A DNA stretch of 64,000 nt from the IMG/VR virus record IMGVR_UViG_3300028394_002328, positions 248,001 through 312,000 of that record; one strand, 5' to 3'. A program made the translations under genes and the position numbers. The notes beneath the pieces were generated by a model. It was not told the DNA's origin, made no database searches, and worked only from the letters and a program-made list of their open reading frames with translations. Shown here one piece after another: positions 22,988 to 50,321 of this stretch (its first letter is position 1; each line of letters begins with the position of its first letter).

Positions 22988-23061
22988 TGGAGCGGGTAGC
23001 GAGAATCGAACTCGCAAATAATCCTTGGCAAGGATTCAGGTTACCTTTACATCATACCCGC
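22988..23061 (-). tRNA. tRNA-Gly (GCC)
   Basis: Cloverleaf, anticodon loop TTGCCAA, encoded CCA. Confidence 0.93.
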
Positions 23062-24089
23062 GCTTTCAATGTAGCATTTACTCTACGAACACTGTGACTA
23101 ATACCACAATACTGTGTACACTTTGACATGACATTCCTTAAGTTATCGGTGCCATACCAAAATCTTTTCAAGTCACCGTATCTCTTTATTTTAAACCCAG
23201 GGAACTTATGTGAGAAGCATAAACGGGCAATCCCGTCCATATCTACCATAATATTTCTGTCGAAGGAATTACAAATCAATTTTTCAGTACCTCGACCATT
23301 CCACCCAATAACCGCATCGTTGTTTTTGTGAACACTACGATGGTACATCTCAACTGTTTCAATCCATTCAGGATCTAAACTTAGATTATACTTTTCATTA
23401 CAAGCATTTAGTATTTTAAACAACCCTTCATGATCCCTAATGACATTGTTATCATAAAACTTGTCATCTCGCTGTTTGCCTTCTTTATCTAATAGTGTAC
23501 CAAACATTGGTTGAAGCCAATTTAATTTTAACTTATCTGCTTTAAGGTCATTCAATACAAAGTCATAAAACTTATCTAAATCTCTGTAATTTTGCTCGCA
23601 CATTATAGACATTGCGTATACAGGATTAGATTTGTTTAATTCTTTTCTCGCTTGAAGTAATAGACGAATAGCATTAACAGCCATGTCAAATGATCCTACC
23701 ATGCCTCTAGTTGAATCATGTACTTCAGGTATGTAACTGTTTAGTGATATAGTAATCTCAGTTGGACCTTCAACGATTAACTTTTTAGCCATTGACAAAT
23801 CAGTAACCATTGTACCGTTCATCACTGATAAACATCTTAGTCCTAATTGGCGACAATATCTAGTAATTGGCCAATATCTTTCAGGATTCATTAATGCTTC
23901 ACCGCCACATATTACTACTGCACCATGTGGATTTAATTCATGAAATTCCTGAATAATATTCCCGCGTTCTTCTATAGTGATATGAGTAGGTAATACAACT
24001 TCTTCCCTAGTCCAATACATGCAGGTTTTACATTTTAGATTACATTGTAAGTTAGTATCTAAGAATAGAAATTTTGGCGGGTGATTCAT
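23052..24089 (-). CDS. radical SAM enzyme with C-terminal Cys (twitch/SPASM-like) domain
   Basis: CNLKCKTC, CGGE. Confidence 0.88.
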   Translation of the reverse strand: MNHPPKFLFLDTNLQCNLKCKTCMYWTREEVVLPTHITIEERGNIIQEFHELNPHGAVVICGGEALMNPERYWPITRYCRQLGLRCLSVMNGTMVTDLSMAKKLIVEGPTEITISLNSYIPEVHDSTRGMVGSFDMAVNAIRLLLQARKELNKSNPVYAMSIMCEQNYRDLDKFYDFVLNDLKADKLKLNWLQPMFGTLLDKEGKQRDDKFYDNNVIRDHEGLFKILNACNEKYNLSLDPEWIETVEMYHRSVHKNNDAVIGWNGRGTEKLICNSFDRNIMVDMDGIARLCFSHKFPGFKIKRYGDLKRFWYGTDNLRNVMSKCTQYCGISHSVRRVNATLKARV

Positions 24090-24097
24090 TAGTCTAT

Positions 24098-24766
24098 TTA
24101 TGCAGGTTTATGCCCACTACTGTCAGCACCTGTTAATATCCAAGATTTTTCATGTCCTATTTGTATTGTAGGATCTCCCCATATAGTATAACCTAATTTT
24201 TTTACCCTATGACAAAATCCTGTATCTTCTGATAAAAAGGTTTCTCTTTCACTATCAGAAAATACTAGAGGTTTGAACCACGGGAATGTCAATGATTCAA
24301 ATACACCCTTTTGAACACCCATGAATCCCATGCCAGTTGCTAATAATTCAATTCGCTCGCCATTAACATCGACCTCATTCCTAGGCATCCAATTCATTGT
24401 GTTTTTTTCTTTACCTTCAACTGCCTGTGCGTATATTTTATTATTATATTGAATATAAAATCCAGTTACAATTTTATGTTCGGGGTTACTAATTAATTTT
24501 TCTAAATCTTTAGGTGTCCAAACGCTATCACTATCAATCCAAACAATCCAATCGTATTTTACTTTTCCATTAAATGGCTTGAAATCTTTAGGAGGATATC
24601 CTGTTCCACCTAATAACCAATTACGGCAATTATAAATTACAGGTGTATAAGTAGTGCTAACATTAAATGCTATACCTTCTTTGTTTAACCAAGTAACGGT
24701 ATTAGTCCAACATGTCACCCACGTTCTACTAAATGACATTCCAGGAAAACAAAATACTATATTCAT
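24098..24766 (-). CDS. GT-A fold glycosyltransferase
   Basis: WIDSD, GMGFM, SEDTGFC, GHEK. Confidence 0.75.
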   Translation of the reverse strand: MNIVFCFPGMSFSRTWVTCWTNTVTWLNKEGIAFNVSTTYTPVIYNCRNWLLGGTGYPPKDFKPFNGKVKYDWIVWIDSDSVWTPKDLEKLISNPEHKIVTGFYIQYNNKIYAQAVEGKEKNTMNWMPRNEVDVNGERIELLATGMGFMGVQKGVFESLTFPWFKPLVFSDSERETFLSEDTGFCHRVKKLGYTIWGDPTIQIGHEKSWILTGADSSGHKPA

Positions 24767-24780
24767 AATTATTATTAATT

Positions 24781-24855
24781 TGGTGCCTCGTGACAGGGTC
24801 GAACTGCCGACATTCGCCGTGTAAAGGCGCTACTCTACCACTGAGTTAACGAGGC
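24781..24855 (-). tRNA. tRNA-Val (TAC)
   Basis: Cloverleaf, CCA. Confidence 0.93.
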
Positions 24856-24865
24856 TTTTTTACTT

Positions 24866-24994
24866 TTAACCTTGACCTCTATATTTTTTAAAACTTCTTT
24901 TTTCTGTTTTATTTAGAGTGCTAGTCTTAACCTTTCCACCTTGACTAGTTCGTTTAACAACCGATTTTGTAGTACCCTCAGATGCCTTAGCCAT
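24866..24994 (-). CDS. small basic peptide ending KKYRGQG (not in ORF track)
   Basis: MAKASEGTTKSVVKRTSQGGKVKTSTLNKTEKRSFKKYRGQG; AAGGA SD. Confidence 0.75.
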   Translation of the reverse strand: MAKASEGTTKSVVKRTSQGGKVKTSTLNKTEKRSFKKYRGQG

Positions 24995-25053
24995 ATAATA
25001 TCCTTTTTAAAAATGTACAGTATTTACTTAGAATACAGATACAGAAAAAAATA

Positions 25054-25491
25054 TTAAGCTAGGTATTCGTAATTGACAGTTTCAGTGTTATTTCTGAAAA
25101 CACTAGCTCCATTTTTTAAATGAAATCTGCGAGCCATTTCAGTTGGTGGACTTAGTGTTACAAAACGACTAATATGAGGTTTATTGGATTTAATATAACT
25201 AACAGCATTTAAAATTAAATCTCTACCAGCACCTGGCTTATAACTCCATATAGTATAGAATATAGCCATGTTAGGATTGCTATCATGATTGAACAATTCG
25301 CTTTCTGTTGTAGGTATTTGGTCTTGATAACTAACACAAGTAATTGCTTTTACTATGTTATTTTCATCTTTCAATACAAAGATATCTCTATTGTTACCTA
25401 TTCTTATAGAATGAGGTATATTGGGGCGAACAGGGTCCTCAGCCAATTTAGTAAACAATTCGTCTTGGTCTGATTTAATCAAGTATAACAT
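25054..25491 (-). CDS. hypothetical protein, possibly GNAT-like
   Basis: Start moved to 25491 because the track start lies inside tRNA-Leu; FYTIWSYKPGAG, TLSP, FHLKNGA. Confidence 0.65.
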   Translation of the reverse strand: MLYLIKSDQDELFTKLAEDPVRPNIPHSIRIGNNRDIFVLKDENNIVKAITCVSYQDQIPTTESELFNHDSNPNMAIFYTIWSYKPGAGRDLILNAVSYIKSNKPHISRFVTLSPPTEMARRFHLKNGASVFRNNTETVNYEYLA

Positions 25492-25529
25492 ATTGCTATT
25501 TATTATATGTAGATATAAAAGATATATTT

Positions 25530-25613
25530 TGGTGCCCCAGGTCGGACTCGAACCGACACGCATTTCTGCACTGGCTTCTAAGACCAGCATGGCTACCGTT
25601 ACATCACCGGGGC
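25530..25613 (-). tRNA. tRNA-Leu (TAG)
   Basis: Long variable arm, CCA. Confidence 0.92.
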
Positions 25614-25622
25614 TAATATAAT

Positions 25623-25696
25623 TGGAGCGGGTAGAGGGAATCGAACCCTCGTATGCAGCTTGGAAGGCTGCCGTTCTACCATTGAACTACACCCGC
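25623..25696 (-). tRNA. tRNA-Gly (TCC)
   Basis: Cloverleaf, CCA. Confidence 0.95.
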
Positions 25697-25701
25697 ACTG
25701 T

Positions 25702-25791
25702 TGGTGGAAGCGGTGAGATTCGAACTCACGGACCCCTTTCAGGGCCTTTAGTTTTCAAGACTAACGCAATCGGCCTCTCTGCCACGCTTCC
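25702..25791 (-). tRNA. tRNA-Ser (TGA)
   Basis: Long variable arm, CCA. Confidence 0.93.
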
Positions 25792-25798
25792 CTAATAA

Positions 25799-26050
25799 GG
25801 TGCTCTGCATCCCTCGGCGGTAATTATAGCGCATCAAGCATATGGACCTCAGAACAACAATTAGTTCTTACCACACACCATCACACACGCCCTCCACCCG
25901 CTCTCGACAGGGATCGTTATCGCATTGCCAGCGCCGGTTAGGTTAAACCGCATGTTACCATGTGAAGATATTACTCTTCAGAACCACCCGTACATATCAC
26001 TGTACTTCATATCCTCTGGGTCAGAGTATCCGTTGATTAGACGGAACGTC
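25799..26050 (-). ncRNA. unassigned structured RNA of about 250 nt between two tRNA-Ser genes
   Basis: GC-richer non-coding segment with many hairpins and a long-range helix. Confidence 0.65.
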
Positions 26051-26051
26051 T

Positions 26052-26139
26052 TGGCGGAGAGTATAGGATTCGAACCTATGCACCGATTTCTCAGCGACGG
26101 TTTAGCAAACCGTTGTATTAACCACTCTACCAACTCTCC
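26052..26139 (-). tRNA. tRNA-Ser (GCT)
   Basis: Long variable arm, CCA. Confidence 0.93.
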
Positions 26140-26144
26140 AATCT

Positions 26145-26222
26145 TGGTGCCTCCGGAGGGACTTGAACCCCCAACCAACGGCTTATGAGGCCGCTGCTAC
26201 TAACCGATTGAGCTACAGAGGC
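26145..26222 (-). tRNA. tRNA with CAT anticodon (elongator Met or Ile2)
   Basis: Paired 1-72, so not an initiator; CCA. Confidence 0.88.
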
Positions 26223-26229
26223 ATATACT

Positions 26230-26315
26230 TGGTGCCCGGGGCCGGACTCGAACCGGCACGCCTTGTGAGCGAGAGATTTTAAGTCTCTTGTGTCTACCTA
26301 TTTCACCACCCGGGC
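26230..26315 (-). tRNA. tRNA-Leu (TAA)
   Basis: Long variable arm, CCA. Confidence 0.95.
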
Positions 26316-26357
26316 GTTAATTTTTAAAGAACTTCTAATTTCTCAGTGTATGTATAC

Positions 26358-26386
26358 ATTGTACACGACACCTGCATATTTGTCAA
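26358..26386 (-). promoter_or_regulatory. sigma70-type promoter for a tRNA sub-cluster
   Basis: TTGACA-17-TACAAT. Confidence 0.8.
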
Positions 26387-26962
26387 TTATTTTAAGAGAC
26401 TTTCTACCCGATCTAGAACTAGATCCCAATGCTCAGTAAACCTGTGACCACCGTTCTCCAAGATGGTTGTTGTTGCGTAAGGAAAGCCTTCTAGCATAGA
26501 TTCATGGGGGATGACCTCATCATCTTTAGCGACAAACAAACTCACCAAACTAGGGGAATAGATTTCACGGACATGTTTCCGCATACTATCTAGTTTATCT
26601 AAATGTGCTATAGAAACAAGAAATTCTTCACCAGTATAATAGTTTTTGTTTGGTCCTAACTTCTCCTTAAGAGTCTCGCTGGGGGTAGAACTAGGATTAA
26701 CTAACACAGCACAACTGTCATACAAGTGACCGAAATAATTTGCGTAAAATGCTCCTAGACTAGTACCAACGAATACCAATTTTTCGTTTGGTTCTCGGGA
26801 TTTCATAAAGTCACAGACAATACCGTCGACCAACTCACCCACTAGATCGGGGTCAAAGGGCAGATCGGGTGCGATTACCTTATCGTCACCGAACCGTTTT
26901 CTGAGAGCGGTGACCTTATCACTAGTGCCTGAACTCGCAAAACCATGTAAGTAAACTATCAT
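26387..26962 (-). CDS. YqiA/YcfP-family alpha/beta esterase
   Basis: YLHGFASS, GTSLG, DEVI, GGHRF. Confidence 0.88.
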   Translation of the reverse strand: MIVYLHGFASSGTSDKVTALRKRFGDDKVIAPDLPFDPDLVGELVDGIVCDFMKSREPNEKLVFVGTSLGAFYANYFGHLYDSCAVLVNPSSTPSETLKEKLGPNKNYYTGEEFLVSIAHLDKLDSMRKHVREIYSPSLVSLFVAKDDEVIPHESMLEGFPYATTTILENGGHRFTEHWDLVLDRVESLLK

Positions 26963-26993
26963 ATTGACGCCCAAAAGTCACTGTCTGAACTAT

Positions 26994-27022
26994 AGTATAG
27001 CAAACTATAGAATATTTGTCAA
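26994..27022 (-). promoter_or_regulatory. sigma70-type promoter
   Basis: TTGACA-17-TATACT. Confidence 0.8.
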
Positions 27023-27648
27023 ATTTTGGATACGATATTGTCAGGAAGATGCTTTAAATCAAAGCCTAAATTAGATAATTTTTCTTTACCATTTGGACTT
27101 AATTTGACAAATCCAACTATTATCTTTTCATGCGGTTCGCCCTGAATTAATCTAGTATAATGATATCCATCAGGATTTAAATCTAATATCTTTTTACCAG
27201 TTAAAAACTCAGCATATTTATTGTCAATTGGTTTTGCGCCTGCTTTAAGCATTAATTTTTCAGCAGGTCCGCTTACTTCTGCCCATGCTCTTTTTGTTTT
27301 AATGTCATCTTTTTTGAGCATGTTATAATCTTTTAATCCTTGTGCAGTGGCTTTATATTCACCTTCAGGATTAAGTTCTGTTTCAGTAGCACTAGCAATC
27401 ATTTTAAAATTATCCGTATTAGATACTTGTTTATAAACACCTAATGCAGTTATATGATCACCACGGCGAACTACTTTCCAATAACCTAAATCATTTGCTA
27501 ATTCTTCAGCACTATTAGCGCTTTTAAAGCCGCCAATCTTTTTATAACTACGCTGAAGCATATCCCATATCTTATCCGCATACTTCATTTTTTGTTCAGG
27601 AGTATGTAGATTAAGAACCTTTTCAACTAATAATTGATGATAACGCAT
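27019..27648 (-). CDS. hypothetical protein, possible virion-internal protein
   Basis: TAAATA 4 nt upstream; N-terminus MRYHQLLVE. Confidence 0.7.
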   Translation of the reverse strand: MRYHQLLVEKVLNLHTPEQKMKYADKIWDMLQRSYKKIGGFKSANSAEELANDLGYWKVVRRGDHITALGVYKQVSNTDNFKMIASATETELNPEGEYKATAQGLKDYNMLKKDDIKTKRAWAEVSGPAEKLMLKAGAKPIDNKYAEFLTGKKILDLNPDGYHYTRLIQGEPHEKIIVGFVKLSPNGKEKLSNLGFDLKHLPDNIVSKI

Positions 27649-27708
27649 CTAGTATTTATGCAATGCGGCAATATCATATCTACAATGGCGTTGTATAAAT
27701 AACAATAT

Positions 27709-28590
27709 ATGAACAATATTTATTTAGTTACGTTTCCAGGTGGCGGTGGTGGTGATTTTTTATGCTCTCAAATTTCTAAAGACATTAATTTTTATCCATT
27801 AGAATCAAGCATGAATACTGCGACTAATACATGTGAGTTAGAGAATCCATTTTTAAAATGGAATATTGACCTAAAATCTCATCATAAATTTAAGGTTTTA
27901 GAAATTTCTGATGTTATGTTAAAAGAAATAGAATTATATTATAATGAAAAAGATTTAGTAGCACCTACTCATTTTTTCGGTAATCTTAGTGAAATTAAAT
28001 TGCCTAGGCTTAAAGGAGTTCACCTATACACTAAACAATTTTTTCCCCTTTTCTATTTGTTATATTGGATAAAAAGATTGTCTGGCCCGAAGCACTTTAT
28101 AGATAAAGAGACTTTTTTAAGAAAGGTAACAGGTGCTAGTAGCTTACCCAATGATGCATATGCTAAATTCTTTAGAGATAAAATAGCAGATAATATATTG
28201 GCAAATAGAAATTTTGTATATGATTTTGAACTAATAGCCGCAACTAGATTACTTGGTAATGCCATAGATTGCATTGAAAGGTTTTATAGATATTATTGTT
28301 TTATTTTTTCCTTTCCTAATCCTCACACCGTATCTAAAGATTGGATTCCATATAATATAGATAATCTCTATCTAGACCCAGTTAATAACTCAAAAGAATT
28401 TTGTCAACTGTTCAACATGGAAAAACCAATTAATCCCGAAATTATTGCATCATATTATTCCAAAAATTTACAGGTAATCGAAGAAACATTTGGCGAACCA
28501 TATGAAGTTTTTATTCTCGGTGATTGGTTATCAAAATTAAAAAAATGGATTGAACTTAAATGTCCAAATTCATATTCAATTAATTTTTAA
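27709..28590 (+). CDS. P-loop/sulfotransferase-like protein, paralog 1
   Basis: N-terminal FPGGGGGDFL; strong similarity to next gene. Confidence 0.55.
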   Translation: MNNIYLVTFPGGGGGDFLCSQISKDINFYPLESSMNTATNTCELENPFLKWNIDLKSHHKFKVLEISDVMLKEIELYYNEKDLVAPTHFFGNLSEIKLPRLKGVHLYTKQFFPLFYLLYWIKRLSGPKHFIDKETFLRKVTGASSLPNDAYAKFFRDKIADNILANRNFVYDFELIAATRLLGNAIDCIERFYRYYCFIFSFPNPHTVSKDWIPYNIDNLYLDPVNNSKEFCQLFNMEKPINPEIIASYYSKNLQVIEETFGEPYEVFILGDWLSKLKKWIELKCPNSYSINF

Positions 28591-28607
28591 TTTTTATAGG
28601 AAAATCA

Positions 28608-29504
28608 ATGAACAATATCTATTTACTTGCATTTAATGGCGGATCAGGAGGAGATTTTTTATGCTCTCAAATCTCTAAAGATAGTGATTTTTATCCATTA
28701 GAATATAAAATTAATCCTATTACCAATACCTATGATTTAGAAAATCCATTTGCAAAATGGAATTTAAATACAAAAAACCAATTCATGCAAGATTTACTAG
28801 TTACTACCGACAATACATTAGAAAATATAGATTTACATTATAATGAAAAAAATTTAGTAGCACCTATTCATTTTTTTAGTTATTTTAATCAAGCGCATTT
28901 AGATACAATATATAGATTACCTAGACTTAAGATAATTAGAGTATATAGTAATCAATTAACTCCCCTTTTTTATTTATTACTATGGATAAAAAGATGGGTT
29001 CTCATACAAGAGTGTGAAAATAAAGAGATTTTTATTAGAGAACAAATTTCAACGTATACCTCTAAATTCGATATAGCTGCTAGAAATAAAATACTTGATA
29101 GCATATTTGCTAATAGAAATTATTATTATTCATTTGAAATTTTAGCCATGTCAAATTTATTTAATAATTCCACGGATTTTGTTAAGAATTTTTTTTTAAA
29201 AAAATATAATTATTATAATACCTTCGTTCAAAATAACACTGGTAAATGGATTCCATATAATATAGATAATCTCTACTTAGACCCAGTTAATAACTCAGAA
29301 GAATTTTGTCAACTTTTAAATATGGAAAAACCAATCGATCCCGAAATTATTTCAAACTACTACTTTAGAAATTTACAGGTAATCGAAGAAACATTTGGCG
29401 AACCATATGAAGTTTTTATTCTAGGTGATTGGTTATCAAAATTAACAGAATGGGTACAAATTCAGTGCCCAAATGCATATTCAGTCGATTTTAAAATTTT
29501 GTAA
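28608..29504 (+). CDS. P-loop/sulfotransferase-like protein, paralog 2
   Basis: FNGGSGGDFL; near-identical C-terminus to paralog 1. Confidence 0.55.
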   Translation: MNNIYLLAFNGGSGGDFLCSQISKDSDFYPLEYKINPITNTYDLENPFAKWNLNTKNQFMQDLLVTTDNTLENIDLHYNEKNLVAPIHFFSYFNQAHLDTIYRLPRLKIIRVYSNQLTPLFYLLLWIKRWVLIQECENKEIFIREQISTYTSKFDIAARNKILDSIFANRNYYYSFEILAMSNLFNNSTDFVKNFFLKKYNYYNTFVQNNTGKWIPYNIDNLYLDPVNNSEEFCQLLNMEKPIDPEIISNYYFRNLQVIEETFGEPYEVFILGDWLSKLTEWVQIQCPNAYSVDFKIL

Positions 29505-31514: not shown

Positions 31515-31576
31515 TTAATCATTTACCGCGATTAGAAAAATATTTATTATTTTATCTATACGCGGAAAATATTATT

Positions 31577-31641
31577 TGGAAGTGCGGGTGGGGTTCGCAC
31601 CCACTGCAATCCGTTCTATTGGACTACGTTGGCACCGCACT
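31577..31641 (-). ncRNA. 65-nt D-armless tRNA-like RNA with CCA end
   Basis: 7-bp acceptor stem, 5-bp T-stem with 7-nt loop, 7-bp central stem, U-CCA. Confidence 0.75.
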
Positions 31642-31646
31642 ATATT

Positions 31647-31672
31647 TGGCGCACCGTAGGGGACTTGAACCA
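31647..31672 (-). pseudogene. 3' fragment of a tRNA gene
   Basis: GGTTCAAGTCCCCTACGGTGCGCCA with no matching 5' half. Confidence 0.65.
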
Positions 31673-31684
31673 TCATGCATGATT

Positions 31685-32310: not shown

Positions 32311-32316
32311 TCAACT

Positions 32317-43314: not shown

Positions 43315-44452
43315 TTTTCATTTTTCCTACTCTGTAAATTTTTTTAAATGATACGAGGCCCTCAGGACCGTTGTCATTTGTATACACATATTTACTAGCC
43401 ATTTTAACCATAGAGTTTATTCCCTCTTTCCAAATTTGGTAGGCTCTAGATTCTGTATGGTTGATTAAAAACCAATGGTCATACTCTCTATTCCAATCTA
43501 AGATTGGCTTATCAGCTTGAAACCAATTATTATTCCAAGTTGAATAAATTATATTTCTCAGCATTTTCTCATGAATAAGATTATAAACTTTAGTACCAAT
43601 TGGTACAGTCCAAATTTTTTGATGTACAGGATTTAACTCTAAGTATTTTTTAATAACATGTGCTTGTTTACATATTATTTCAAATGCATTTGGGTTCCAG
43701 TAAAAATACTCTACTGTTGCATTATCATATCCTTGAAGGTAATTTTCTACCCCCGAATTAGTAGCTCTATCGGTAAAACCAACAACAAAATCATTAAATT
43801 TATTAATAGCAGATCTAGGTTTACATACACCTAATATTACACCAATTTTTTGATTTTTATCTAAAACTTTTCTTACATCATCAATAGCAGCAATATCCCA
43901 CCTGACCCCACTGACCGGGCTTAGTAATTCTCTCCGATTTTCAATCCATCCATCGTCATTGCTTTTTAAATAAGAATCAAAGACATGGTCAGTTAAATCC
44001 GATACCGTAATTTTTATATCAGGATATAAATTGTGAATATCTTTCAGCCTCGGTATTGTTTGTAAAACATGCTCAGAATATAATGAATTGGATGAAGATT
44101 GATCGTTTTTATCTAAGTTTTTTACTGAAACTGTTCCTTTTTCAAAATGAATAACTAGCAGTTCATCAACCTTTAAATTTTGACGAAGGAAGCTAGTTAA
44201 CAAATTATGTGAGTCTGCTCCACCACTATATAGAATTATAATATAATCATATTTTTCCCGCAATTCCTTGGCTCTTTTGTCATATAACTCATCAAGAGTT
44301 TGGTTAGGTTCTACTGTCCAATCAAATTTATCAAAAGCATTGTCATAAAACGCCCATTCTACTTCTTGATTAGTTTCGGTAGCATGAATGCAAGCTAAAA
44401 TTTTATTAGTAAATGTTTTAGATCCTACACGGTAGTAGCTGTTATTTTTCAT
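43298..44452 (-). CDS. PP-loop adenine nucleotide alpha-hydrolase-like enzyme
   Basis: LYSGGADS. Confidence 0.7.
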   Translation of the reverse strand: MKNNSYYRVGSKTFTNKILACIHATETNQEVEWAFYDNAFDKFDWTVEPNQTLDELYDKRAKELREKYDYIIILYSGGADSHNLLTSFLRQNLKVDELLVIHFEKGTVSVKNLDKNDQSSSNSLYSEHVLQTIPRLKDIHNLYPDIKITVSDLTDHVFDSYLKSNDDGWIENRRELLSPVSGVRWDIAAIDDVRKVLDKNQKIGVILGVCKPRSAINKFNDFVVGFTDRATNSGVENYLQGYDNATVEYFYWNPNAFEIICKQAHVIKKYLELNPVHQKIWTVPIGTKVYNLIHEKMLRNIIYSTWNNNWFQADKPILDWNREYDHWFLINHTESRAYQIWKEGINSMVKMASKYVYTNDNGPEGLVSFKKIYRVGKMKNESSN

Positions 44453-44497: not shown

Positions 44498-45679
44498 ATG
44501 AATCCAAAAACCTGTATGTTTCCTTTCACTTCATTGAGTGTGTCGCCCCGAGGCGCAATCAGACCATGCTGCATGTATAATAGTCCTGATATGCCCACTT
44601 GGGAAAATATCAAAGACTTAACATCGGAAGTACCATGGCCTAGCAAATCTATTAAGATACTTCAAGAAAAAATGTTGAGTGATCGCATAGAAGAATTAAC
44701 TCCATTGTGCAACTCTTGTTGGGAACCTGAAAATGCAGGACTTGATAGTCATAGATTAAGATACCAAAGATTATTAGCACTTCCAAATGAAGAGTTAATT
44801 AAAACCCCTAAACTAACATTTTTAGATTTACAGTTTGGATACTTATGTAATTTAAGTTGTATTATGTGCCATCCCGAAGAAAGTTCACAGGTTCAAAAAA
44901 CAATTTTCAAATTAATAGACAATACTTCAAATACTAAACAAAAAAAAATTTACCAATCTAAGGTAAATTTATATGACAACCATGATTGGACTGTAGATGA
45001 AAATTCGTATCAAAAAGTTTTGGAATTATGCCAGCCTGTCAAGAATATTAAAATATCAGGGGGAGAGCCATTTTTTAATCCAAAATTTAAACCTTTCTTA
45101 GAATTTTTATTATCAAAAAAAGTTCCAATTGAATACTTGCATGTGACCACAAATTTAACTATATACGATAAAGACATTGTTGAACTGTTAAATAGATTTA
45201 CTAATGTTAGATTTAGATTCAGTTTAGAATCAATAGGTAAAGAAGATGACTTTATAAGATGGCCTAGCAGATGGGAGGAAAAACAAGAAAATTTACATGC
45301 ATATTTAAGTCAGTTACACACAAAAAACATTGTTTCTAGTACATGCATCCAAAGTTTAAATCTATTTTCTTTTTCAAATACTATTAAATTCTTGAAAAAT
45401 TTACGTTATAATATCAATATTCAACAACAAATTGCTGAAAATTCATTAGCTGGGATTTATTACTCCGACAAACAATATATTGAACACTACTTAAAAAATA
45501 ATGAAGCTAATTTTATATCTAAGTATTTAGAAAATATTATAACCCATATCAATGATCCTTCATTTCAAGTTAATTATTTTCTAGATATGGCCAAACTACA
45601 AAATAAAAATATACAAAACGAATTTCCAATTTGGTATGAGTTTCATACCAAATATATTAGAGATTCAAATTCAACGTAA
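44498..45679 (+). CDS. radical SAM enzyme with N-terminal twitch/SPASM-like domain
   Basis: CMFP..RPCC..CNSCW; CNLSCIMC; SGGEP. Confidence 0.88.
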   Translation: MNPKTCMFPFTSLSVSPRGAIRPCCMYNSPDMPTWENIKDLTSEVPWPSKSIKILQEKMLSDRIEELTPLCNSCWEPENAGLDSHRLRYQRLLALPNEELIKTPKLTFLDLQFGYLCNLSCIMCHPEESSQVQKTIFKLIDNTSNTKQKKIYQSKVNLYDNHDWTVDENSYQKVLELCQPVKNIKISGGEPFFNPKFKPFLEFLLSKKVPIEYLHVTTNLTIYDKDIVELLNRFTNVRFRFSLESIGKEDDFIRWPSRWEEKQENLHAYLSQLHTKNIVSSTCIQSLNLFSFSNTIKFLKNLRYNINIQQQIAENSLAGIYYSDKQYIEHYLKNNEANFISKYLENIITHINDPSFQVNYFLDMAKLQNKNIQNEFPIWYEFHTKYIRDSNST

Positions 45680-46373
45680 AGTTTGGATTTAGTGCGTGAA
45701 GATATTCGTAAAATGCATCATTTAATTTTGAATCCCGTTTTCTAAATGTAATAACTAATGCAATTCTTTTACCTGTTAAAAAATTAGCTCCATGAATAAT
45801 ATCGGTTCTAAAATAATACCAGGTTTTAGGTTTTAAAATCGTACTAGTTATTTCTTTATAACCTCTTATATCCCGTATATTTTTCATTGTTTCATGTTTA
45901 TATAACGAGCTATTTGGATCATGATACCAACTTGTAATAATATTTTCACCGCCCAAATCTATAAAATATATAAGTTCACCGGCTCTTCCTTTATCAACAT
46001 GGGGGGTTTGCCAACCATTTTTTTCCGTGGATTTGGGCCATGTTGTTTGAAGATGAATCATCCAATCGTCTCCGACCGAATCTTTATCCCCATTATATTT
46101 AAATTCAGAAAGTAAAGGAAAAGTGTTTTTAGACCATTCAATCATAGGTTCTAATTCATTTGGATGTAGCTTATGATGTAAGAAATAAGCGACATTTGTA
46201 ATTCTTCCATCATCAGTATCAACATATGGTCTTCTATCAGGATCATTTATTTGATCTAATTCACTAGCTACTACTCGTTGCGGATCAGGTTCATAGTTTT
46301 TAGGAACAGGAGTCTCTAAATTTCGATTCCCTAAGTTCATATCCATATAGCAAAGAATTTTAGAATAGTCCAT
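45657..46373 (-). CDS. 2OG-Fe(II) oxygenase-like protein
   Basis: PHVD...IIHG...RIAL. Confidence 0.6.
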   Translation of the reverse strand: MDYSKILCYMDMNLGNRNLETPVPKNYEPDPQRVVASELDQINDPDRRPYVDTDDGRITNVAYFLHHKLHPNELEPMIEWSKNTFPLLSEFKYNGDKDSVGDDWMIHLQTTWPKSTEKNGWQTPHVDKGRAGELIYFIDLGGENIITSWYHDPNSSLYKHETMKNIRDIRGYKEITSTILKPKTWYYFRTDIIHGANFLTGKRIALVITFRKRDSKLNDAFYEYLHALNPNFTLNLNL

Positions 46374-46412: not shown

Positions 46413-47357
46413 ATGTTTTTTACTGGCCATAATAATTGGTATCAATGGGGATATGACAATTCAAATTGGTTAGGGCGACGGACATCAATAGATCAGACAT
46501 TTTGTAGTAGATATGTCATTGACAAAATAAAATCAATGACATTTGCAGAAGCTTTGGATTATAACTTAAAGACCTTTGTTAATGACTTTCCAAATGAAAA
46601 ATATGCTTTATTATTATCTGGAGGATCAGAAAGTGAAACGGTATTTCGAACATTTATAAAAAATAAAGTTGACTTTACTCCATATATTTTTCGTTATGAA
46701 AACGACATAAACATTTACGATGTATCATACGCTATTACACTGTGCGAATCACATGAGAAAAAATATAGGTTAATTGATCTAAATTTAAAAAAATTTTTTG
46801 AACATGGTGCCGAAAAAATAAGCGAATATGCTCAAATTGACAACCCCCGTTTGTTACCACAATTAAAGTTTTTAGATTATATTGATGAAATGCCAATTGG
46901 CTGTCACGGTGAACCGAGCTGGCATAGGCTTAATCATAGTTACGAAGAGCCTGGTATATGGGTTAATTCTGAATTTGAATTTGAAATGGGATGGGACAAA
47001 TATATTCAACGCACCAATCGAACATCTATAATGTTATGGTTTAAATATACCCCCGAACTTGCATTAGCATATAACCAAACACCGTGGATTAATACGTTAA
47101 TAAATGACGGATTTTATGGTAAGCTTGGGCCTAGAAGTACAAAAATTCAAGCATATAAACAAGTTTACCCTGAAATGCTTTTTAGAAAAAAACAAACCGG
47201 ATTTGAAAAAATTGAATTCGTTATTGACGAATTTGAAAAATTTTTATATCAAAAGTATAATGGATTTTTATACCGAGGAATAGTACAACGATCTAGAGAG
47301 GAAGTTTTTAAAATATTATTGAAAAATGTAAATACTTTTATGACGTTACTGCCGTAA
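46413..47357 (+). CDS. PP-loop-like enzyme
   Basis: LLSGGSESE; C-terminal RKKQTGFE reminiscent of the asparagine synthetase family. Confidence 0.6.
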   Translation: MFFTGHNNWYQWGYDNSNWLGRRTSIDQTFCSRYVIDKIKSMTFAEALDYNLKTFVNDFPNEKYALLLSGGSESETVFRTFIKNKVDFTPYIFRYENDINIYDVSYAITLCESHEKKYRLIDLNLKKFFEHGAEKISEYAQIDNPRLLPQLKFLDYIDEMPIGCHGEPSWHRLNHSYEEPGIWVNSEFEFEMGWDKYIQRTNRTSIMLWFKYTPELALAYNQTPWINTLINDGFYGKLGPRSTKIQAYKQVYPEMLFRKKQTGFEKIEFVIDEFEKFLYQKYNGFLYRGIVQRSREEVFKILLKNVNTFMTLLP

Positions 47358-47664
47358 CTAATTGATGCGTAATATTATTTTCCAAACAATAAGCGTCTAT
47401 TAAAGATTCAAATCTTGCCAAACCTAAAGGATCCGATTTAAAGTTTAGATATTGCTCTTCACTTTGCCAAATATTATGCATAGTAAGAGTTAGATTATCT
47501 TCTGAATATTCAAACTGTGAGGTTAACCAAAACATAGTCTGTACATAATTATTACTAAAGTTTATACAGTATTCAATTTCCTCCGGTGAAGAAAATGACC
47601 ATTGTGGTATATAAAAATTTACTGAAGTGCTAGGTCTTACTTGAGTTCTTGTCACAGTGTACAT
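47338..47664 (-). CDS. small hypothetical protein
   Basis: GGAG SD, TAAATA upstream. Confidence 0.7.
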   Translation of the reverse strand: MYTVTRTQVRPSTSVNFYIPQWSFSSPEEIEYCINFSNNYVQTMFWLTSQFEYSEDNLTLTMHNIWQSEEQYLNFKSDPLGLARFESLIDAYCLENNITHQLVTAVTS

Positions 47665-47736: not shown

Positions 47737-47874
47737 TCACAGAAGTTCGTAGTCCTGTTTACCTACTCCACATTCAGGACAAGCAAAATCATCAGGTAAA
47801 TCTTCCCAATGACCTTCTAGTTCTTCATTGTGGACATGACCACATACGATACAAACGTGTTCTTGATTAGCCAT
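47737..47874 (-). CDS. rubredoxin (not in ORF track)
   Basis: MANQEHVCIVCGHVH...WEDLPDDFACPECGVGKQDY. Confidence 0.9.
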   Translation of the reverse strand: MANQEHVCIVCGHVHNEELEGHWEDLPDDFACPECGVGKQDYELL

Positions 47875-48325
47875 GAGTTAACTCCTCCAATTTTTGTAGA
47901 TAGGCGGCCGCATGACGTTCTTCAACTCGCTTAAGAGCGGCAAAACGTTTTTCTGCCTTAGCTAAAATTTGTGCAAATTGTTCGGCATGCTCTCGGCTTT
48001 CTTCAATTTGTTCACCAAATTCTTTGACTGCATGACCATACATTTCATCGGATGCTTGTCCTTGGAACGTTGGATACATTTCCATGTATTCGTAAGTTTC
48101 CCCTTCAATGGCTTTAGTTAAACATTCTACAGTATTGGGCTTGCCAATAAGTAACTCAAGATGACCCCAAGCATGTTTGAGTTCTTGATCCGCTGTATGC
48201 TCAAAATGTTGGGCAATATCTTCATGCCCTTCTTCACGGGCGATCCGAGCAAAATAGCGATATTTAATATGAGCCATTGATTCGCCTGCCAATGCGCTCT
48301 CTAAGTTCTTAAGTGTGTTTGACAT
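47867..48325 (-). CDS. rubrerythrin
   Basis: AGESMAHIKY, QELKHA, EGETYEY..MYP, ESREH, EERHA. Confidence 0.9.
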   Translation of the reverse strand: MSNTLKNLESALAGESMAHIKYRYFARIAREEGHEDIAQHFEHTADQELKHAWGHLELLIGKPNTVECLTKAIEGETYEYMEMYPTFQGQASDEMYGHAVKEFGEQIEESREHAEQFAQILAKAEKRFAALKRVEERHAAAYLQKLEELTHG

Positions 48326-48356
48326 AATGTCTCCTTTGTGTGTGATGTTATTTAGT

Positions 48357-48382
48357 CAAAAAAGGCCGTGCGGCCCTTTTTA
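48357..48382. terminator. intrinsic terminator
   Basis: A-tract-GGCC-GTGC-GGCC-T-tract. Confidence 0.7.
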
Positions 48383-48397
48383 TCATTTTAAATTAGT

Positions 48398-48952
48398 TTA
48401 AAATGAGTGAGTGTACGCTAGGTTATAGCTGTGATTGAAACTGTCACCACGAACTAGGTCATAACGAAGACCAACACTATCATGTTTGGTAATAGCATAG
48501 CTAACACCGGCACGAGCAGTATGGGTAGTGTCAAGATCACCATTGTTACCAAAACCATTACGGAAACGATAACCAACCTTGGCAGTTAGCTTGTCAAACA
48601 TAGTGTATGTAACGCCCGGCTCGACACTGTAGTAACCAAAATTAGCGCCATTAGTGAACTTTTCACCTGTAGCAACACGGGTGTAAACACCAACTGGGCC
48701 AACTGGTAGTGAACCAGTTAAACCAACTTCAAGACGGTCGCTAAGTGCTTTAGTGCCAGCCTGTTGGTAAGCTGTAAAGCCAATATCACCGGCAAACATT
48801 TTGCCAAATGATTCTTTAACGCTGAGTTGATAGTTGCTGCTGTCGCGGGCACCACGATCACCCTTTTGGATTTGATCTTCAAGGGTAATGCTAGCTGCAT
48901 TGGCTAGACCAGTAACAGCCGCTAGTGCTGCGATTGCGAAAACTTTCTTCAT
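48398..48952 (-). CDS. small outer-membrane beta-barrel (KdgM/porin-like)
   Basis: Signal peptide, amphipathic strands, C-terminal YTHSF. Confidence 0.8.
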   Translation of the reverse strand: MKKVFAIAALAAVTGLANAASITLEDQIQKGDRGARDSSNYQLSVKESFGKMFAGDIGFTAYQQAGTKALSDRLEVGLTGSLPVGPVGVYTRVATGEKFTNGANFGYYSVEPGVTYTMFDKLTAKVGYRFRNGFGNNGDLDTTHTARAGVSYAITKHDSVGLRYDLVRGDSFNHSYNLAYTHSF

Positions 48953-48981
48953 ATAGATATCTCCTTTAAAAAGTTTCATAC

Positions 48982-49010
48982 AGTATATATTTATTCTAAA
49001 GTGGTGTCAA
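48982..49010 (-). promoter_or_regulatory. sigma70 promoter with embedded TAAATA
   Basis: TTGACA-17-TATACT; spacer ends in TAAATA. Confidence 0.75.
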
Positions 49011-49059
49011 TATAATTTTTACCCATAAAAAATGTATAAATATTAAAAAAGGACAATAT

Positions 49060-49686
49060 ATGAGTGAGATTGTAATACCTTCAATTCGTGAAACATTGCG
49101 TATACAACGTTGGGACGATCATAGATATTATCATCATAGCAGAATTAATCAATTCTTACATTTGATTTCGGCTACTAGTTTCTTAGTAGCATATGTATAT
49201 TTGTTTGTCAACCCCGTAATCTCATCTTACATTGCTTGGTTTGTAGCTATGACTACACGCCAAATTGGGCATTTCTTTTTTGAACCCGATGGTTACGATG
49301 AATATAACAAGGCCACTTTTGAATACAAAGAAAAGATAAAAGTTGGATTCAATCTCAAACGTAAACGAGTGTTACTAGCATGTTGGGCAGCAGTACCTAT
49401 ACTAGCTTACTTTGATGCCGAACTTTTTAACTTTATCATGCCCGATGCTAGCCCAGATACACTGTTTAATCGTATTGGGTGGGGTTGGTTATGGTTGGGT
49501 GTAGCAGGTGTAGTATTTAGAATGATTCAACTTACTGCTATTGAAAGTCGCCGTACTGCTATCACTTGGTGTATTAAGATCATTACAGATCCATTCCACG
49601 ATGTCGTTATCTATCGTAAAAGTCCACTATATTTAATGCAGGGACAACTCATTGACCCCGACTTAAGACAAGACTACGAAGATTAA
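49060..49686 (+). CDS. Mpo1/DUF962-like membrane protein
   Basis: HRYYHHSRINQFLH, RQIGHFFFE, several TMs. Confidence 0.7.
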   Translation: MSEIVIPSIRETLRIQRWDDHRYYHHSRINQFLHLISATSFLVAYVYLFVNPVISSYIAWFVAMTTRQIGHFFFEPDGYDEYNKATFEYKEKIKVGFNLKRKRVLLACWAAVPILAYFDAELFNFIMPDASPDTLFNRIGWGWLWLGVAGVVFRMIQLTAIESRRTAITWCIKIITDPFHDVVIYRKSPLYLMQGQLIDPDLRQDYED

Positions 49687-50321
49687 TTTTCAAGACTTAG
49701 ATATTAAATAACTGATGTACTATTTAGAATTGCCTAATTTTCCAACAGATGTGTTGACCGAGCAGTATCAACGTCCAGGCTCGTATGATATTAAAGTTAA
49801 TTATTGGAATGTTAAAATAGAATTTTTTAAAAAACAGATAATTGATTTTTTTGTAAGTCATAATCTAGAATTAAAAGATGGAGAAATATTTAAGAAAAGT
49901 CCCGGAATAATAGGTATTGTTCATACTGATGTTGTTTGGGATAGTTTTCAATCTGCATGGACCCGTTGGCATTGTGCTGTTAATATTAACCTTGACAACA
50001 CTAATTCATTGATGTATTGGTTTTCAACTACCGATACTGAAGTGTATCCCATGCCAGGAGCAACTGGATTAAGAGGAATTCATTATGGCACTAAAAATAA
50101 TAACAACTTTCATGACCGTGATGAATATACAGTCCTCGATAGTTTTTGCATTAATGGTCCAACGCTAGTAAGAACCAGTGTTCCTCACTTGGTTAAGAAT
50201 TTAGATAATAAAGATCGGTGGTGCCTTAGTCTAAGATTTAAGGGAAACCCAACTTTTGAAGAATGTGCTAAGAAATTGCTCCTTTAAAGTGATCTACGCC
50301 AAGACTACGAAGATTAATTTT
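49669..50321. repeat. 22-bp direct repeat flanking a single-gene cassette
   Basis: CAAGACTACGAAGATTAATTTT at 49669-49690 and 50300-50321. Confidence 0.9.
49715..50287 (+). CDS. cupin/2OG-Fe(II) oxygenase-like protein
   Basis: VHTD...AVNIN...VPHLVKN...RWCLSLRF. Confidence 0.6.
   Translation: MYYLELPNFPTDVLTEQYQRPGSYDIKVNYWNVKIEFFKKQIIDFFVSHNLELKDGEIFKKSPGIIGIVHTDVVWDSFQSAWTRWHCAVNINLDNTNSLMYWFSTTDTEVYPMPGATGLRGIHYGTKNNNNFHDRDEYTVLDSFCINGPTLVRTSVPHLVKNLDNKDRWCLSLRFKGNPTFEECAKKLLL

What the first reader, a model, noticed from the sequence alone, without database searches (positions are those of the whole stretch)
23052..50287. Large AT-rich island of tailoring enzymes with no scaffold synthase
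Seen: three radical SAM enzymes (one B12-type), about five 2OG/cupin oxygenase-like proteins including an Asp/Asn beta-hydroxylase-like one, two PP-loop enzymes, three methyltransferase-like, three sulfotransferase-like, GNAT-like, two GT-like, two desaturases and two Bug proteins. Many are preceded by TAAATA and arranged as convergent pairs with overlapping 3' ends. There is no PKS, NRPS or nucleotide-sugar pathway in the window. Inference: a late-expressed system modifying protein substrates (virion fibres, the Asn-rich secreted protein, or a RiPP-like small protein such as 47338-47664) or envelope lipids.
Basis: inference. Interest (0 to 1): 0.68.

Follow-up and report, generated by a model that had tools for sequence, protein, structure and literature searches.

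The report
Phage enzyme guild: PP-loop ligases, binding proteins, desaturases
The AT-rich right half of this island in a freshwater jumbo phage is one copy of a virus-only set of enzyme genes that recurs in hundreds of uncultivated phages and probably captures a carboxylic acid and remodels host lipids during infection, though its chemistry is untested.

Summary
A strand-specific TAAATA upstream motif and five convergent pairs with overlapping 3' ends are also real.

The 27-kb "island" is composite. The left part (23.0-36.5 kb) is a tRNA array with HNH endonucleases and assorted genes at normal GC. Only 37.2-47.7 kb (29.9% GC against 37%) is a distinct block.

That block is a recurrent, virus-restricted gene guild. 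The PP-loop family is found in 363 IMG/VR contigs and the desaturase in at least 591, with none in 50,697 GenBank phages. Membership and sub-operons (PPB→PPA→TctC with overlapping stops and starts; GNAT-DES-DES-PPB) persist although gene order is shuffled. The genes therefore do not assort independently.

PPA folds like the synthetase domain of asparagine synthetase and beta-lactam synthetase. PP-loop genes pair with two unrelated carboxylate-binding protein families, TctC and DctP.

The proposed RiPP precursor (47338-47664) is an ABM-fold protein.

Best reading: a late-type accessory module for carboxylate capture and amidation plus oxygen-dependent lipid tailoring. This function is inferred, not shown.

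The parts
37156..37725 (+). Cupin-like protein (guild families f187/c31), with HxE...H
   Evidence: Guild HMMs give 6e-13. hhalign links these families to the AspH-like family. Candidate metal triad found. Paralogue of 49715.
37711..39180 (-). Class-B-like (B12-type) radical SAM enzyme, 489 aa
   Evidence: Pfam Radical_SAM 1e-12. NCBIfam hits are all B12-rSAM families, best PhpK at 9e-21 but below cut-off. 63-67% identical in three other viral contigs.
39250..39753 (+). Asp/Asn beta-hydroxylase (LpxO/OlsC-type) like cupin
   Evidence: Pfam Asp_Arg_Hydrox 2e-4, 21.5 bits against a cut-off of 22.6. Guild family c47 1e-9; that family's representative is above the cut-off. HRD...H present.
39759..40373 (+). 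GNAT-fold acyltransferase, tightly linked to the desaturases
   Evidence: AF2 pLDDT 88. Foldseek gives GNAT N-acetyltransferases at probability 1.0. Present in 37 of 52 desaturase-anchored loci.
40373..41131 (+). Membrane di-iron desaturase 1 (Delta9-type His boxes)
   Evidence: Pfam FA_desaturase 5e-17. Eight invariant His residues (A6).
41062..41895 (+). Membrane di-iron desaturase 2
   Evidence: Pfam 3e-16. At least 591 viral contigs carry relatives.
41898..42410 (+). Cupin-like protein (families f203/c31/c49), with HxD...H
42403..43314 (-). TctC/Bug periplasmic carboxylate-binding protein with a signal peptide; its start overlaps the end of PPA by 17 nt
   Evidence: Pfam TctC 4e-16. PDB sequence hits to Bug27, BugD, TphC and AdpC at about 1e-11. 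31 of 43 viral TctC genes lie next to a PPA gene.
43298..44452 (-). PPA: PP-loop ATP-pyrophosphatase resembling the synthetase domain of AsnB and beta-lactam synthetase; no glutaminase domain
44498..45679 (+). N-terminal-twitch radical SAM protein (NF033640)
   Evidence: NCBIfam 211 bits against a cut-off of 170. Five tandem paralogues at genome 33967-40365.
45657..46373 (-). Cupin-like protein, with HxD...H
46413..47357 (+). PPB: second PP-loop enzyme (SGGxxS), homologous to PPA
   Evidence: The A4 profile hits NadE, QueC and MnmA. hhalign to PPA: 96%, E 4e-9. Present in 37 of 52 desaturase-anchored loci.
47338..47664 (-). ABM-fold (antibiotic-biosynthesis-monooxygenase-like) small protein; not a RiPP precursor
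   Evidence: Atlas features 0.91 and structure TM 0.64-0.72. Conserved globular family (A3).
47867..48325 (-). Rubrerythrin-like protein
   Evidence: Pfam 4.5e-16. Related islands carry AhpC/AhpD-like genes (by N-terminal sequence only) at similar positions.
48398..48979 (-). Small outer-membrane beta-barrel-like secreted protein
   Evidence: Pfam Porin_4 9e-6, below cut-off. Guild family c45.
49060..49686 (+). Membrane protein, weakly Mpo1-like (2-hydroxy fatty acid dioxygenase family)
   Evidence: Pfam 8.8e-5, 23.0 bits against a cut-off of 24.
49715..50287 (+). Cupin-like protein (family c31), with HxD...H
   Evidence: Guild HMM 9e-25.
22988..34573 (-). tRNA array (18 by ARAGORN, 19 by Rfam) interspersed with HNH genes (31759-32187, 34598-35158); not part of the guild
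23052..24089 (-). Radical SAM protein that matches radical SAM/SPASM maturase families in NCBIfam over its N-terminal radical SAM core; peripheral
27709..29504 (+). Tandem paralogue pair (55% identical, 26.9% GC) of a virus-wide family; sulfotransferase-like only as a lead
29481..30449 (-). First TctC/Bug protein, with a signal peptide
   Evidence: Pfam 1e-23.
36521..37192 (+). SAM-dependent methyltransferase
   Evidence: Pfam Methyltransf_23 7e-10.

Best explanation
The interval is composite.

Shown:
- Window 37.2-50.3 kb is one instance of a recurrent, compositionally distinct (AT-rich) accessory gene guild that is essentially restricted to uncultivated tailed phages, many of them jumbo.
- Its stable units are (a) the operon PPB→PPA→TctC, and (b) GNAT-fold protein + two membrane desaturases + PPB. 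These are accompanied by cupin/AspH-like oxygenases, a B12-class radical SAM, an N-twitch radical SAM and an ABM-fold protein.

Inferred mechanism:
1. The genes are transcribed from the same TAAATA-type promoters as the fibre genes.
2. The secreted TctC proteins bind a carboxylate in the periplasm and hand it to the host TctAB membrane unit. This would work as phage PstS does for phosphate; this phage also carries a PstS-like gene.
3. The cytoplasmic PP-loop enzymes adenylate the carboxylate and turn it into an amide or lactam, which traps or converts it.
4. The membrane desaturases, the AspH/LpxO-like and Mpo1-like proteins and the GNAT remodel acyl chains of host lipids, or of the same metabolite.

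No scaffold synthase is needed because the substrates come from the host.
For: Recurrence:
- PPA relatives occur in 363 IMG/VR contigs and the desaturase in at least 591.
- In 61 dereplicated PPA loci the commonest neighbours are PPB (41), TctC (35), DES (24), NMO (22) and B12 rSAM (17). Backbone genes of this genome hit at most 14 of the 86 loci searched.
- The reciprocal, desaturase-anchored set gives PPB 37, GNAT-like 37 and PPA 20 of 52 loci.

Operon structure:
- 17 distinct PPA→TctC pairs have a median gap of -13 nt. 13 PPB→PPA pairs have a median gap of -4 nt.

Virus restriction:
- Atlas clusters are 99-100% Uroviricota.
- Only 2 MAG contigs among 185,579 species genomes carry a relative, and the longer one (23 kb) is phage-like; the other is a 1.9-kb fragment that was not examined.
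- None of 300 further genomes of that phylum has a match.
- PPA, the B12 rSAM and TctC have no real match (TctC gave two chance-level matches to Salmonella sequence) in 50,697 GenBank phage records.

Chemistry:
- PPA gives Z 11.7, 10.6 and 9.6 to the AsnB, beta-lactam synthetase and carbapenam synthetase synthetase domains, against about 7-8 for other PP-loop enzymes.
- TctC keeps features of carboxylate-binding TTT proteins, and 36 of 46 viral TctC have signal peptides while 1 of 94 PPA do.
- Related islands add TctA. They also hold a DctP-family binding protein next to PP-loop genes. That is a second, unrelated carboxylate binder paired with the same enzyme class.

Lipid side:
- Invariant His boxes, AspH-like and Mpo1-like proteins.
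- FA_hydroxylase and NMO/FabK-family genes in relatives.

Precedents: phage PstS (doi 10.1101/2021.07.20.453049) and cyanophage Delta9 desaturases (PMC5776448).

Composition: the guild is lower in GC than its flanks in all five genomes checked.
Against: - No substrate is known for any protein, and no expression data exist (no RNA runs).
- This genome has no TctA. The one MAG that co-bins related phage contigs also lacks TctA, so a working partner transporter is unproven.
- The DctP-like partners lack signal peptides. That fits a cytoplasmic ligand-presenting role better than uptake.
- PPA and PPB fail the Pfam models for Asn_synthase, NAD_synthase and QueC.
- In smaller phages PPA sits among tail-fibre genes.
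- Co-localisation could partly reflect a shared hyperplastic region.
Confidence: 0.45

Rival explanations
1. The enzymes modify virion proteins after translation. Cupin and prolyl-hydroxylase-type oxygenases would hydroxylate fibre proteins. AsnB-like PP-loop enzymes would amidate or cross-link Asp/Glu side chains, as lasso-peptide cyclases do. Radical SAM enzymes would methylate or cross-link residues.
For: - In two groups of smaller contigs, PPA, a PF13640 2OG oxygenase and two unknown families lie on the same strand between baseplate-wedge, tail-fibre and fibre-assembly genes.
- The TAAATA motif is shared with large fibre-like ORFs.
- Five twitch rSAM paralogues lie beside the 6344-aa ORF and fibre genes.
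Against: - Integral-membrane desaturases, secreted TctC, TctA and DctP partners have no role in modifying cytoplasmic virion proteins.
- Tail-fibre regions are common insertion sites for accessory genes.
- No substrate motif or precursor was found.
Confidence: 0.2
2. There is no joint function. The block is a hyperplastic dumping ground where unrelated auxiliary genes accumulate, and the co-occurrence reflects common descent of the region.
For: - Gene order and orientation are heavily shuffled, copy numbers vary, and many loci lack several families.
- The near-identical relative differs mosaically, at 82-100% amino-acid identity, with one desaturase missing.
- The left part of the interval is clearly a mix of tRNAs, HNH genes and assorted genes.
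Against: - Specific adjacencies survive the shuffling with overlapping stop and start codons.
- PPA proteins are only 40-48% identical across loci, yet keep the same partners.
- The enrichment holds from two independent anchors.
Confidence: 0.2
3. The PP-loop enzymes act on nucleotides or RNA rather than on imported carboxylates. Examples would be tRNA modification next to the tRNA array, or NAD+ restoration against NAD-depleting defences, with TctC bringing in nicotinate.
For: - Most characterised PP-loop enzymes act on nucleotides or tRNA.
- The best PDB sequence hits of the PPB profile are NH3-dependent NAD/NMN synthetases (3e-5).
- Bug27 (from memory, a nicotinate binder) is among the TctC hits.
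- The tRNA array adjoins the block.
Against: - The hits cover only the generic PP-loop motif region.
- The genome has no match to NAD_synthase, NAPRTase or QueC models.
- PPA is structurally closest to AsnB-type enzymes.
- In other phages the guild is not next to tRNAs.
Confidence: 0.08
4. The block is a RiPP-type gene cluster with a small precursor peptide tailored by the radical SAM, hydroxylase and GNAT enzymes.
For: The enzyme classes recur in RiPP pathways, and NCBIfam gives weak hits to RiPP rSAM maturases.
Against: - The proposed precursor is an ABM-fold protein conserved along its whole length.
- No other conserved small ORF with a variable core was seen.
- Desaturases and binding proteins do not fit this model.
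Confidence: 0.03

Closest known systems
Phage-encoded periplasmic phosphate-binding protein PstS (cyanophage auxiliary metabolic gene)
   Same: It is a virus-encoded, secreted substrate-binding protein that plugs into the host's membrane transporter to raise uptake during infection (doi 10.1101/2021.07.20.453049). This phage also carries a PstS-like gene at 59445-60425.
   Different: Here the binder belongs to the TTT (TctC/Bug) family and binds carboxylates. It comes in several paralogues and is translationally coupled to a cytoplasmic PP-loop enzyme. Function with host TctAB is unproven.
Cyanophage Delta9 lipid desaturases (vFAD; PMC5776448)
   Same: They are virus-encoded membrane di-iron desaturases with the three His boxes, thought to change host membrane properties.
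   Different: tblastn found no match to any cyanophage record. The genes here are about 250 aa, usually occur in pairs, and are embedded in a larger enzyme set with a GNAT and PP-loop genes. Regiospecificity is untested.
Asparagine synthetase B, beta-lactam synthetase and carbapenam synthetase (AsnB-type PP-loop enzymes)
   Same: Same fold of the ATP-dependent synthetase domain (Z 9.6-11.7 over 240-283 residues) and the same SGGxDS motif. The implied chemistry is carboxylate adenylation followed by amide or lactam formation.
   Different: Only 8-10% identity. There is no N-terminal glutaminase domain. The proteins fail the Pfam Asn_synthase model. The family is virus-only, with no known substrate.
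Ornithine-lipid and lipid A tailoring enzymes (OlsB GNAT-type, OlsC/LpxO AspH-type, OlsE FA_hydroxylase-type); recalled from memory, a lead only
   Same: The same three enzyme superfamilies co-occur in the guild: the GNAT fold, AspH-like proteins, and FA_hydroxylase in relatives.
   Different: No specific similarity to OlsB, OlsC or OlsE was tested or found. The GNAT model's best Foldseek matches (those listed) are small-molecule and ribosomal-protein N-acetyltransferases.

Membership tests
PP-loop ATP pyrophosphatase superfamily | SGGxDS PP-loop motif | tested here: met
   PPA: S76, G78, D80 and S81 are invariant in 41 sequences. PPB: G71 and S74 are invariant, and S69 and D73 are at least 90% conserved.
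PP-loop ATP pyrophosphatase superfamily | Rossmann-like alpha/beta nucleotide-binding fold | tested here: met
   PPA: AF2 pLDDT 92, VIA Z 7-11.7 to many PP-loop structures. PPB: profile hits to NadE, QueC, MnmA and TtuA, and hhalign 96% to PPA.
Asparagine synthetase B (glutamine-hydrolysing) | N-terminal Ntn glutaminase domain plus a match to Pfam Asn_synthase | tested here: not met
   PPA is 384 aa, and its alignment to AsnB starts at about residue 119 of AsnB. No PF00733 match in the protein or the genome.
NAD synthetase / QueC | Match to PF02540 or PF06508 | tested here: not met
   No match in the genome at E <= 1. Only the motif region aligns to PDB members.
Tripartite tricarboxylate transporter binding protein (TctC/Bug) | PF03401 above cut-off, with an N-terminal signal peptide | tested here: met
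   84.6 and 59.6 bits against a cut-off of 27. Hydrophobic N-termini in both window proteins (read from the translations) and in 36 of 46 viral members.
Tripartite tricarboxylate transporter binding protein (TctC/Bug) | Cognate TctA/TctB membrane unit available | tested here: inconclusive
   No TctA in this genome. TctA is present in 8 related viral loci. The host is unknown, and the co-binned MAG lacks TctA.
Class B (cobalamin-dependent) radical SAM | CxxxCxxC cluster motif plus an N-terminal B12-binding domain | tested here: inconclusive
   The radical SAM domain and motif are present. Pfam B12-binding was not detected in 37711, but every NCBIfam hit is a B12-rSAM family and the PhpK alignment covers residues 22-360. 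The genome paralogue at 50799 does match PF02310.
N-terminal twitch radical SAM (NF033640) | Score above the curated cut-off | tested here: met
   210.9 bits against 170.
Membrane fatty-acid desaturase (Delta9-type) | Three His boxes (HxxxxH, HxxHH, HxxHH) and PF00487 above cut-off | tested here: met
   H79, H84, H116, H119, H120, H246, H249 and H250 are invariant in 24 sequences. Substrate and regiospecificity cannot be tested here.
Fe(II)/2-oxoglutarate AspH-type cupin oxygenase | Match to PF05118 and an HxD/E...H metal triad | tested here: inconclusive
   39250 scores 21.5 bits against a cut-off of 22.6, while a family representative scores 25.5 bits. The other four proteins link only by profile-profile steps. 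The triad pattern is present in all five.
RiPP biosynthetic cluster | Precursor peptide gene with leader and core | tested here: not met
   47338-47664 is an ABM-fold globular family.
Sulfotransferase | Match to a sulfotransferase family model, or the fold | tested here: inconclusive
   No Pfam or PHROG hit for 27709 or 30416. For 27709, the language-model neighbours include DUF2972 and Sulfotransfer_1 clusters at 0.92-0.94 with low feature counts.

The most novel reading that the evidence does not exclude
The guild is a virus-specific biosynthetic pathway and not a loose set of auxiliary genes. Phage-only PP-loop ligases (PPA, PPB and PPC) would work with dedicated carboxylate-binding proteins, TctC and signal-less DctP, that present the substrate. 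Together with desaturases, a GNAT, cupin oxygenases and radical SAM enzymes they would build an amide-bearing, lipid-like metabolite from host precursors during late infection. This would be a 'viral natural product' pathway spread across hundreds of aquatic jumbo phages.
Probability: 0.22. Interest if true: 0.85.

Novelty: new variant of a known kind. Interest (0 to 1): 0.64.

Why it matters
Phage accessory-gene islands are known, but this one has unusual properties:
- Several of its families have no Pfam model and are found almost only in viruses.
- It recurs in hundreds of uncultivated freshwater and other aquatic phage contigs.
- It is absent from all cultured phages searched.
- It repeatedly couples PP-loop ligases to carboxylate-binding proteins of two unrelated families, a pairing I could not find described.

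If the inferred function holds, phages would be extending host uptake to organic acids, beyond phosphate, and editing membrane lipids with a dedicated multi-enzyme set. That bears on how large phages reprogram cells and on carbon and nitrogen flow in lakes. The work also yields concrete, expressible targets: the PPB-PPA-TctC operon and the GNAT-DES-DES unit.

Tried and rejected
- **Searches of 50,697 GenBank phage records.** DNA of 37-47 kb and the PPA and B12-rSAM proteins gave no match. TctC gave only spurious bacterial hits. DES and the twitch rSAM gave only distant hits at 24-28% identity. A backbone fibre ORF shares only a C-terminal domain with other phages. The phage therefore has no cultured relative.
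- **Family scans of ten unassigned island proteins.** Pfam at E up to 5 gave nothing usable and PHROGs gave two weak hits.
- **PDB sequence searches.** The PPA profile and the GNAT-like protein found nothing. Folds were needed instead.
- **Complex prediction.** Complex prediction on PPA with mature TctC returned no verdict (score 0.02). This is not evidence either way.
- **TctC-anchored scan.** The TctC alignment was too divergent for the pattern scan, so the reciprocal test used the desaturase.
- **Host inference.** The one MAG that co-bins related phage contigs (Haliscomenobacter) lacks TctA, so no host is claimed.
- **Promoter and terminator scans.** Sigma-70-like promoters and intrinsic terminators are not enriched in the block (91 against 87 ± 8; 6 against 5.6).
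- **RNA families.** Rfam finds only tRNAs.
- **NAD, QueC and AsnB family membership.** Tested and not met.
- **Length limit.** The search for homologous proteins sees only proteins 0.55-1.75 times the query length, so longer fusions of PPA would have been missed.

Full report
**Setting**

The window is bases 248001-312000 of a single 335,035-bp contig (37.0% GC). It is an IMG/VR virus record that CheckV rates 95% complete. The contig has a 6344-aa ORF, many fibre-like ORFs and a large tRNA set. Near-identical DNA occurs in freshwater metagenomes from several studies, and no RNA run holds it. No GenBank phage is close. It is an uncultivated freshwater jumbo phage of unknown host.

**Checking the observation**

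Most family calls hold.

- *Radical SAM.* Pfam finds radical SAM domains in 23052-24089, 37711-39180 and 44498-45679.
  - NCBIfam places 44498 in NF033640, the N-terminal twitch radical SAM family, above the cut-off.
  - It matches 37711 only to B12-binding radical SAM families, all far below cut-off.
- *Desaturases.* Both pass Pfam and keep eight invariant histidines in three boxes.
- *TctC/Bug.* Both proteins pass Pfam and carry signal peptides.
- *PP-loop proteins.* Neither has a Pfam match, but both are real.
  - PPA (43298-44452) has an invariant SGGxDS. Its AF2 model has pLDDT 92. The best structural matches are the synthetase domains of asparagine synthetase B (Z 11.7), beta-lactam synthetase (10.6) and carbapenam synthetase (9.6); other PP-loop enzymes score about 7-8.
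  - The PPB (46413-47357) profile hits NadE, QueC and MnmA, and PPB is homologous to PPA (hhalign 96%).
- *GNAT.* 39759-40373 folds as a GNAT.
- *Cupins.* 39250 sits just under the Asp_Arg_Hydrox cut-off. The four other cupin candidates join related viral families. Those families link to the AspH-like family by profile-profile comparison. All five show an HxD/E...H pattern.
- *Gene arrangement.* Five convergent pairs overlap at their 3' ends by 8-24 nt (coordinates).
- *TAAATA motif.* It is strand-specific genome-wide, upstream of 90 of 351 ORFs against 23 for its reverse complement. It also precedes large fibre-like genes. Sigma-70-like promoters are not enriched.

Weaker points:

- 'Sulfotransferase-like' is only a language-model lead.
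- Two of the three methyltransferase calls are unverified.
- AT-richness applies only to 27.7-29.5 kb and 35.9-47.7 kb.
- The left 13 kb is a tRNA array with HNH genes.
- The genome has nucleotide-sugar genes, five more twitch rSAM genes, a second B12 rSAM and a carbamoyltransferase at 31-65 kb.

**What it is**

PPA has 557 homologues in metagenomes. None has a Pfam domain or an informative name. Atlas clusters of this fold are 99-100% viral.

A pattern scan found 363 IMG/VR contigs with a relative. It found only two contigs among 185,579 prokaryotic species genomes. Both are MAG contigs; I examined the longer one (23 kb) and it is phage-like. None of 300 further genomes of that phylum has a match.

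I clustered all ORFs in the loci fetched around PPA. After dereplication to 61 loci, the commonest neighbours were:

| Family | Loci (of 61) |
|---|---|
| PPB | 41 |
| TctC | 35 |
| Desaturase | 24 |
| NMO/FabK-family flavoprotein | 22 |
| B12 rSAM | 17 |
| ABM-fold small protein | 15 |
| Twitch rSAM | 14 |

FA_hydroxylase, Rieske oxygenase, cupins, GNATs and TctA were also recurrent. Backbone genes of this genome appear in at most 14 of the 86 loci searched.

The reciprocal test, anchored on the desaturase, drew on at least 591 contigs and gave 52 dereplicated loci:

| Family | Loci (of 52) |
|---|---|
| PPB | 37 |
| GNAT-like protein | 37 |
| f187 cupin | 27 |
| PPA | 20 |
| ABM-fold small protein | 18 |
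| B12 rSAM | 15 |

Gene order and orientation are shuffled, but sub-units persist:

- 31 of 43 TctC genes touch a PPA gene.
- 9 of 10 Rieske genes touch PPB.
- 17 distinct PPA→TctC pairs have a median gap of -13 nt.
- 13 PPB→PPA pairs have a median gap of -4 nt.

The guild is lower in GC than its flanks in all five genomes checked. However, the coherent unit is the block at 37.2-50.3 kb, not the whole interval.

**How it most likely works**

*Shown:*

- The fold of PPA implies carboxylate adenylation chemistry.
- TctC proteins are secreted members of a carboxylate-binding family.
- Some related islands encode TctA itself.
- A third PP-loop family, and in one locus PPA, lie next to a DctP-family binding protein. 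DctP is an unrelated family that also binds carboxylates, and here it lacks a signal peptide.

*Inferred:*

- The binding proteins capture a carboxylate, in the periplasm for TctC by way of host TctAB.
- The PP-loop enzymes then convert it to an amide or lactam.
- The analogy is phage PstS (doi 10.1101/2021.07.20.453049); this phage has a PstS-like gene at 59445-60425.
- The desaturases, the AspH/LpxO-like protein, the weak Mpo1-like protein and the GNAT point to oxygen-dependent tailoring of acyl chains. So do the FA_hydroxylase and NMO genes in relatives. Cyanophage Delta9 desaturases are a precedent (PMC5776448).
- Rubrerythrin here fits a load of iron and oxygen enzymes. So does IscU in relatives (Pfam NifU_N), and so do the AhpC/AhpD-like genes there, which I recognised from their N-terminal sequences only.

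Whether the two halves act on one metabolite or on separate targets is open. The ligand is unknown. Aspartate, nicotinate and fatty or dicarboxylic acids are all possible. None is supported over the others.

**Rivals**

1. *Modification of virion proteins.* In smaller phages, PPA and a prolyl-hydroxylase-type oxygenase sit inside tail-fibre modules. The promoter motif is shared with fibre genes. Membrane desaturases and secreted binders do not fit this reading.
2. *A hyperplastic region with no joint function.* The conserved, overlapping sub-operons argue against it.
3. *Nucleotide, tRNA or NAD chemistry.* Family tests were negative.
4. *A RiPP cluster.* The proposed precursor 47338-47664 is a conserved ABM-fold protein.

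**Comparison with known systems, and novelty**

The block works like a phage auxiliary-metabolic island. Its parts resemble phage PstS, cyanophage desaturases and AsnB-type synthetases. It is not a member of the AsnB, NadE or QueC families.

I found no description of PP-loop genes coupled to TctC or DctP in phages. The literature I could search mentions viral tctA only in passing (PMC4164917, PMC6359870) and multiple phage radical SAM genes without a function (PMC5332604).

I rate it a new variant of a known kind, with a real chance that it is a virus-specific pathway.

Noticed in passing
window 59445-60425 (-): A PstS-like periplasmic phosphate-binding protein (PBP_like_2, 1.8e-33). It is a classic phage auxiliary gene and a precedent for the TctC genes.
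   Followed up: partly
genome C1:31000-65000 (loci L091, L092): A second accessory island. It holds five tandem N-twitch radical SAM paralogues, an NDP-sugar C-methyltransferase, an epimerase/dehydratase, a UDP-glucose/GDP-mannose dehydrogenase fusion, a 719-aa B12-binding radical SAM, a carbamoyltransferase and a 2298-aa ORF. It lies beside a 6344-aa ORF and fibre genes.
   Followed up: partly
whole genome; examples upstream of window 23052, 27709, 36521, 43298 and 49060: The motif (A/G)ATAAATA(C/A)T lies 10-30 nt before start codons on the sense strand of about a quarter of ORFs, including fibre-like genes. It resembles the T4 late promoter TATAAATA (from memory). No sigma factor was sought.
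   Followed up: partly
L066:6828-7760, L079:5618-6550, L036:5533-6489, L024:14917-15864: DctP-family (TRAP) binding proteins without signal peptides sit directly beside PP-loop genes in related phages. This suggests a cytoplasmic ligand-presenting role.
   Followed up: partly
L073:9995-13708: A full-length TctA membrane subunit (PF01970, 4.7e-45) is encoded between two PPA paralogues in a phage contig.
   Followed up: partly
window 51325-53706, 53633-55159 and 57845-59419 (-): Three large proteins with signal or lipoprotein-type N-termini, rich in Asn, Thr and Ser, and with no Pfam match. Together with the small beta-barrel protein and the TctC proteins they suggest heavy investment in the host envelope.
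   Followed up: no
G001 contigs C90, C31 and C57 (L089, L093-L096): Several contigs carrying PPA relatives (the one examined, C90, is phage-like) are binned into a Haliscomenobacter MAG. This is either a weak host hint or a binning artefact. That MAG has no TctA.
   Followed up: partly
window 37156-47664; L006, L008, L009, L012: The guild is 4-9 points lower in GC than its flanks in every phage genome checked.
   Followed up: yes
window 33127-33209 (-): Rfam calls a nineteenth tRNA (34 bits) that ARAGORN did not report.
   Followed up: no
window 22527-22979 (-) and 55211-56218 (-): A dCMP deaminase and a GT4 glycosyltransferase flank the interval.
   Followed up: no
L069 (IMGVR_UViG_GVMAG-S-1045060-49_000001): A contig labelled as a giant-virus MAG carries three PPA copies and a TctC. 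It is probably a phage contig in a giant-virus bin.
   Followed up: no
L001/L005 against window 40373-42410: The near-identical relative (82-100% amino-acid identity) lacks desaturase 1 and has a different cupin at the 41898 position. The block is turning over at short evolutionary distance.
   Followed up: partly
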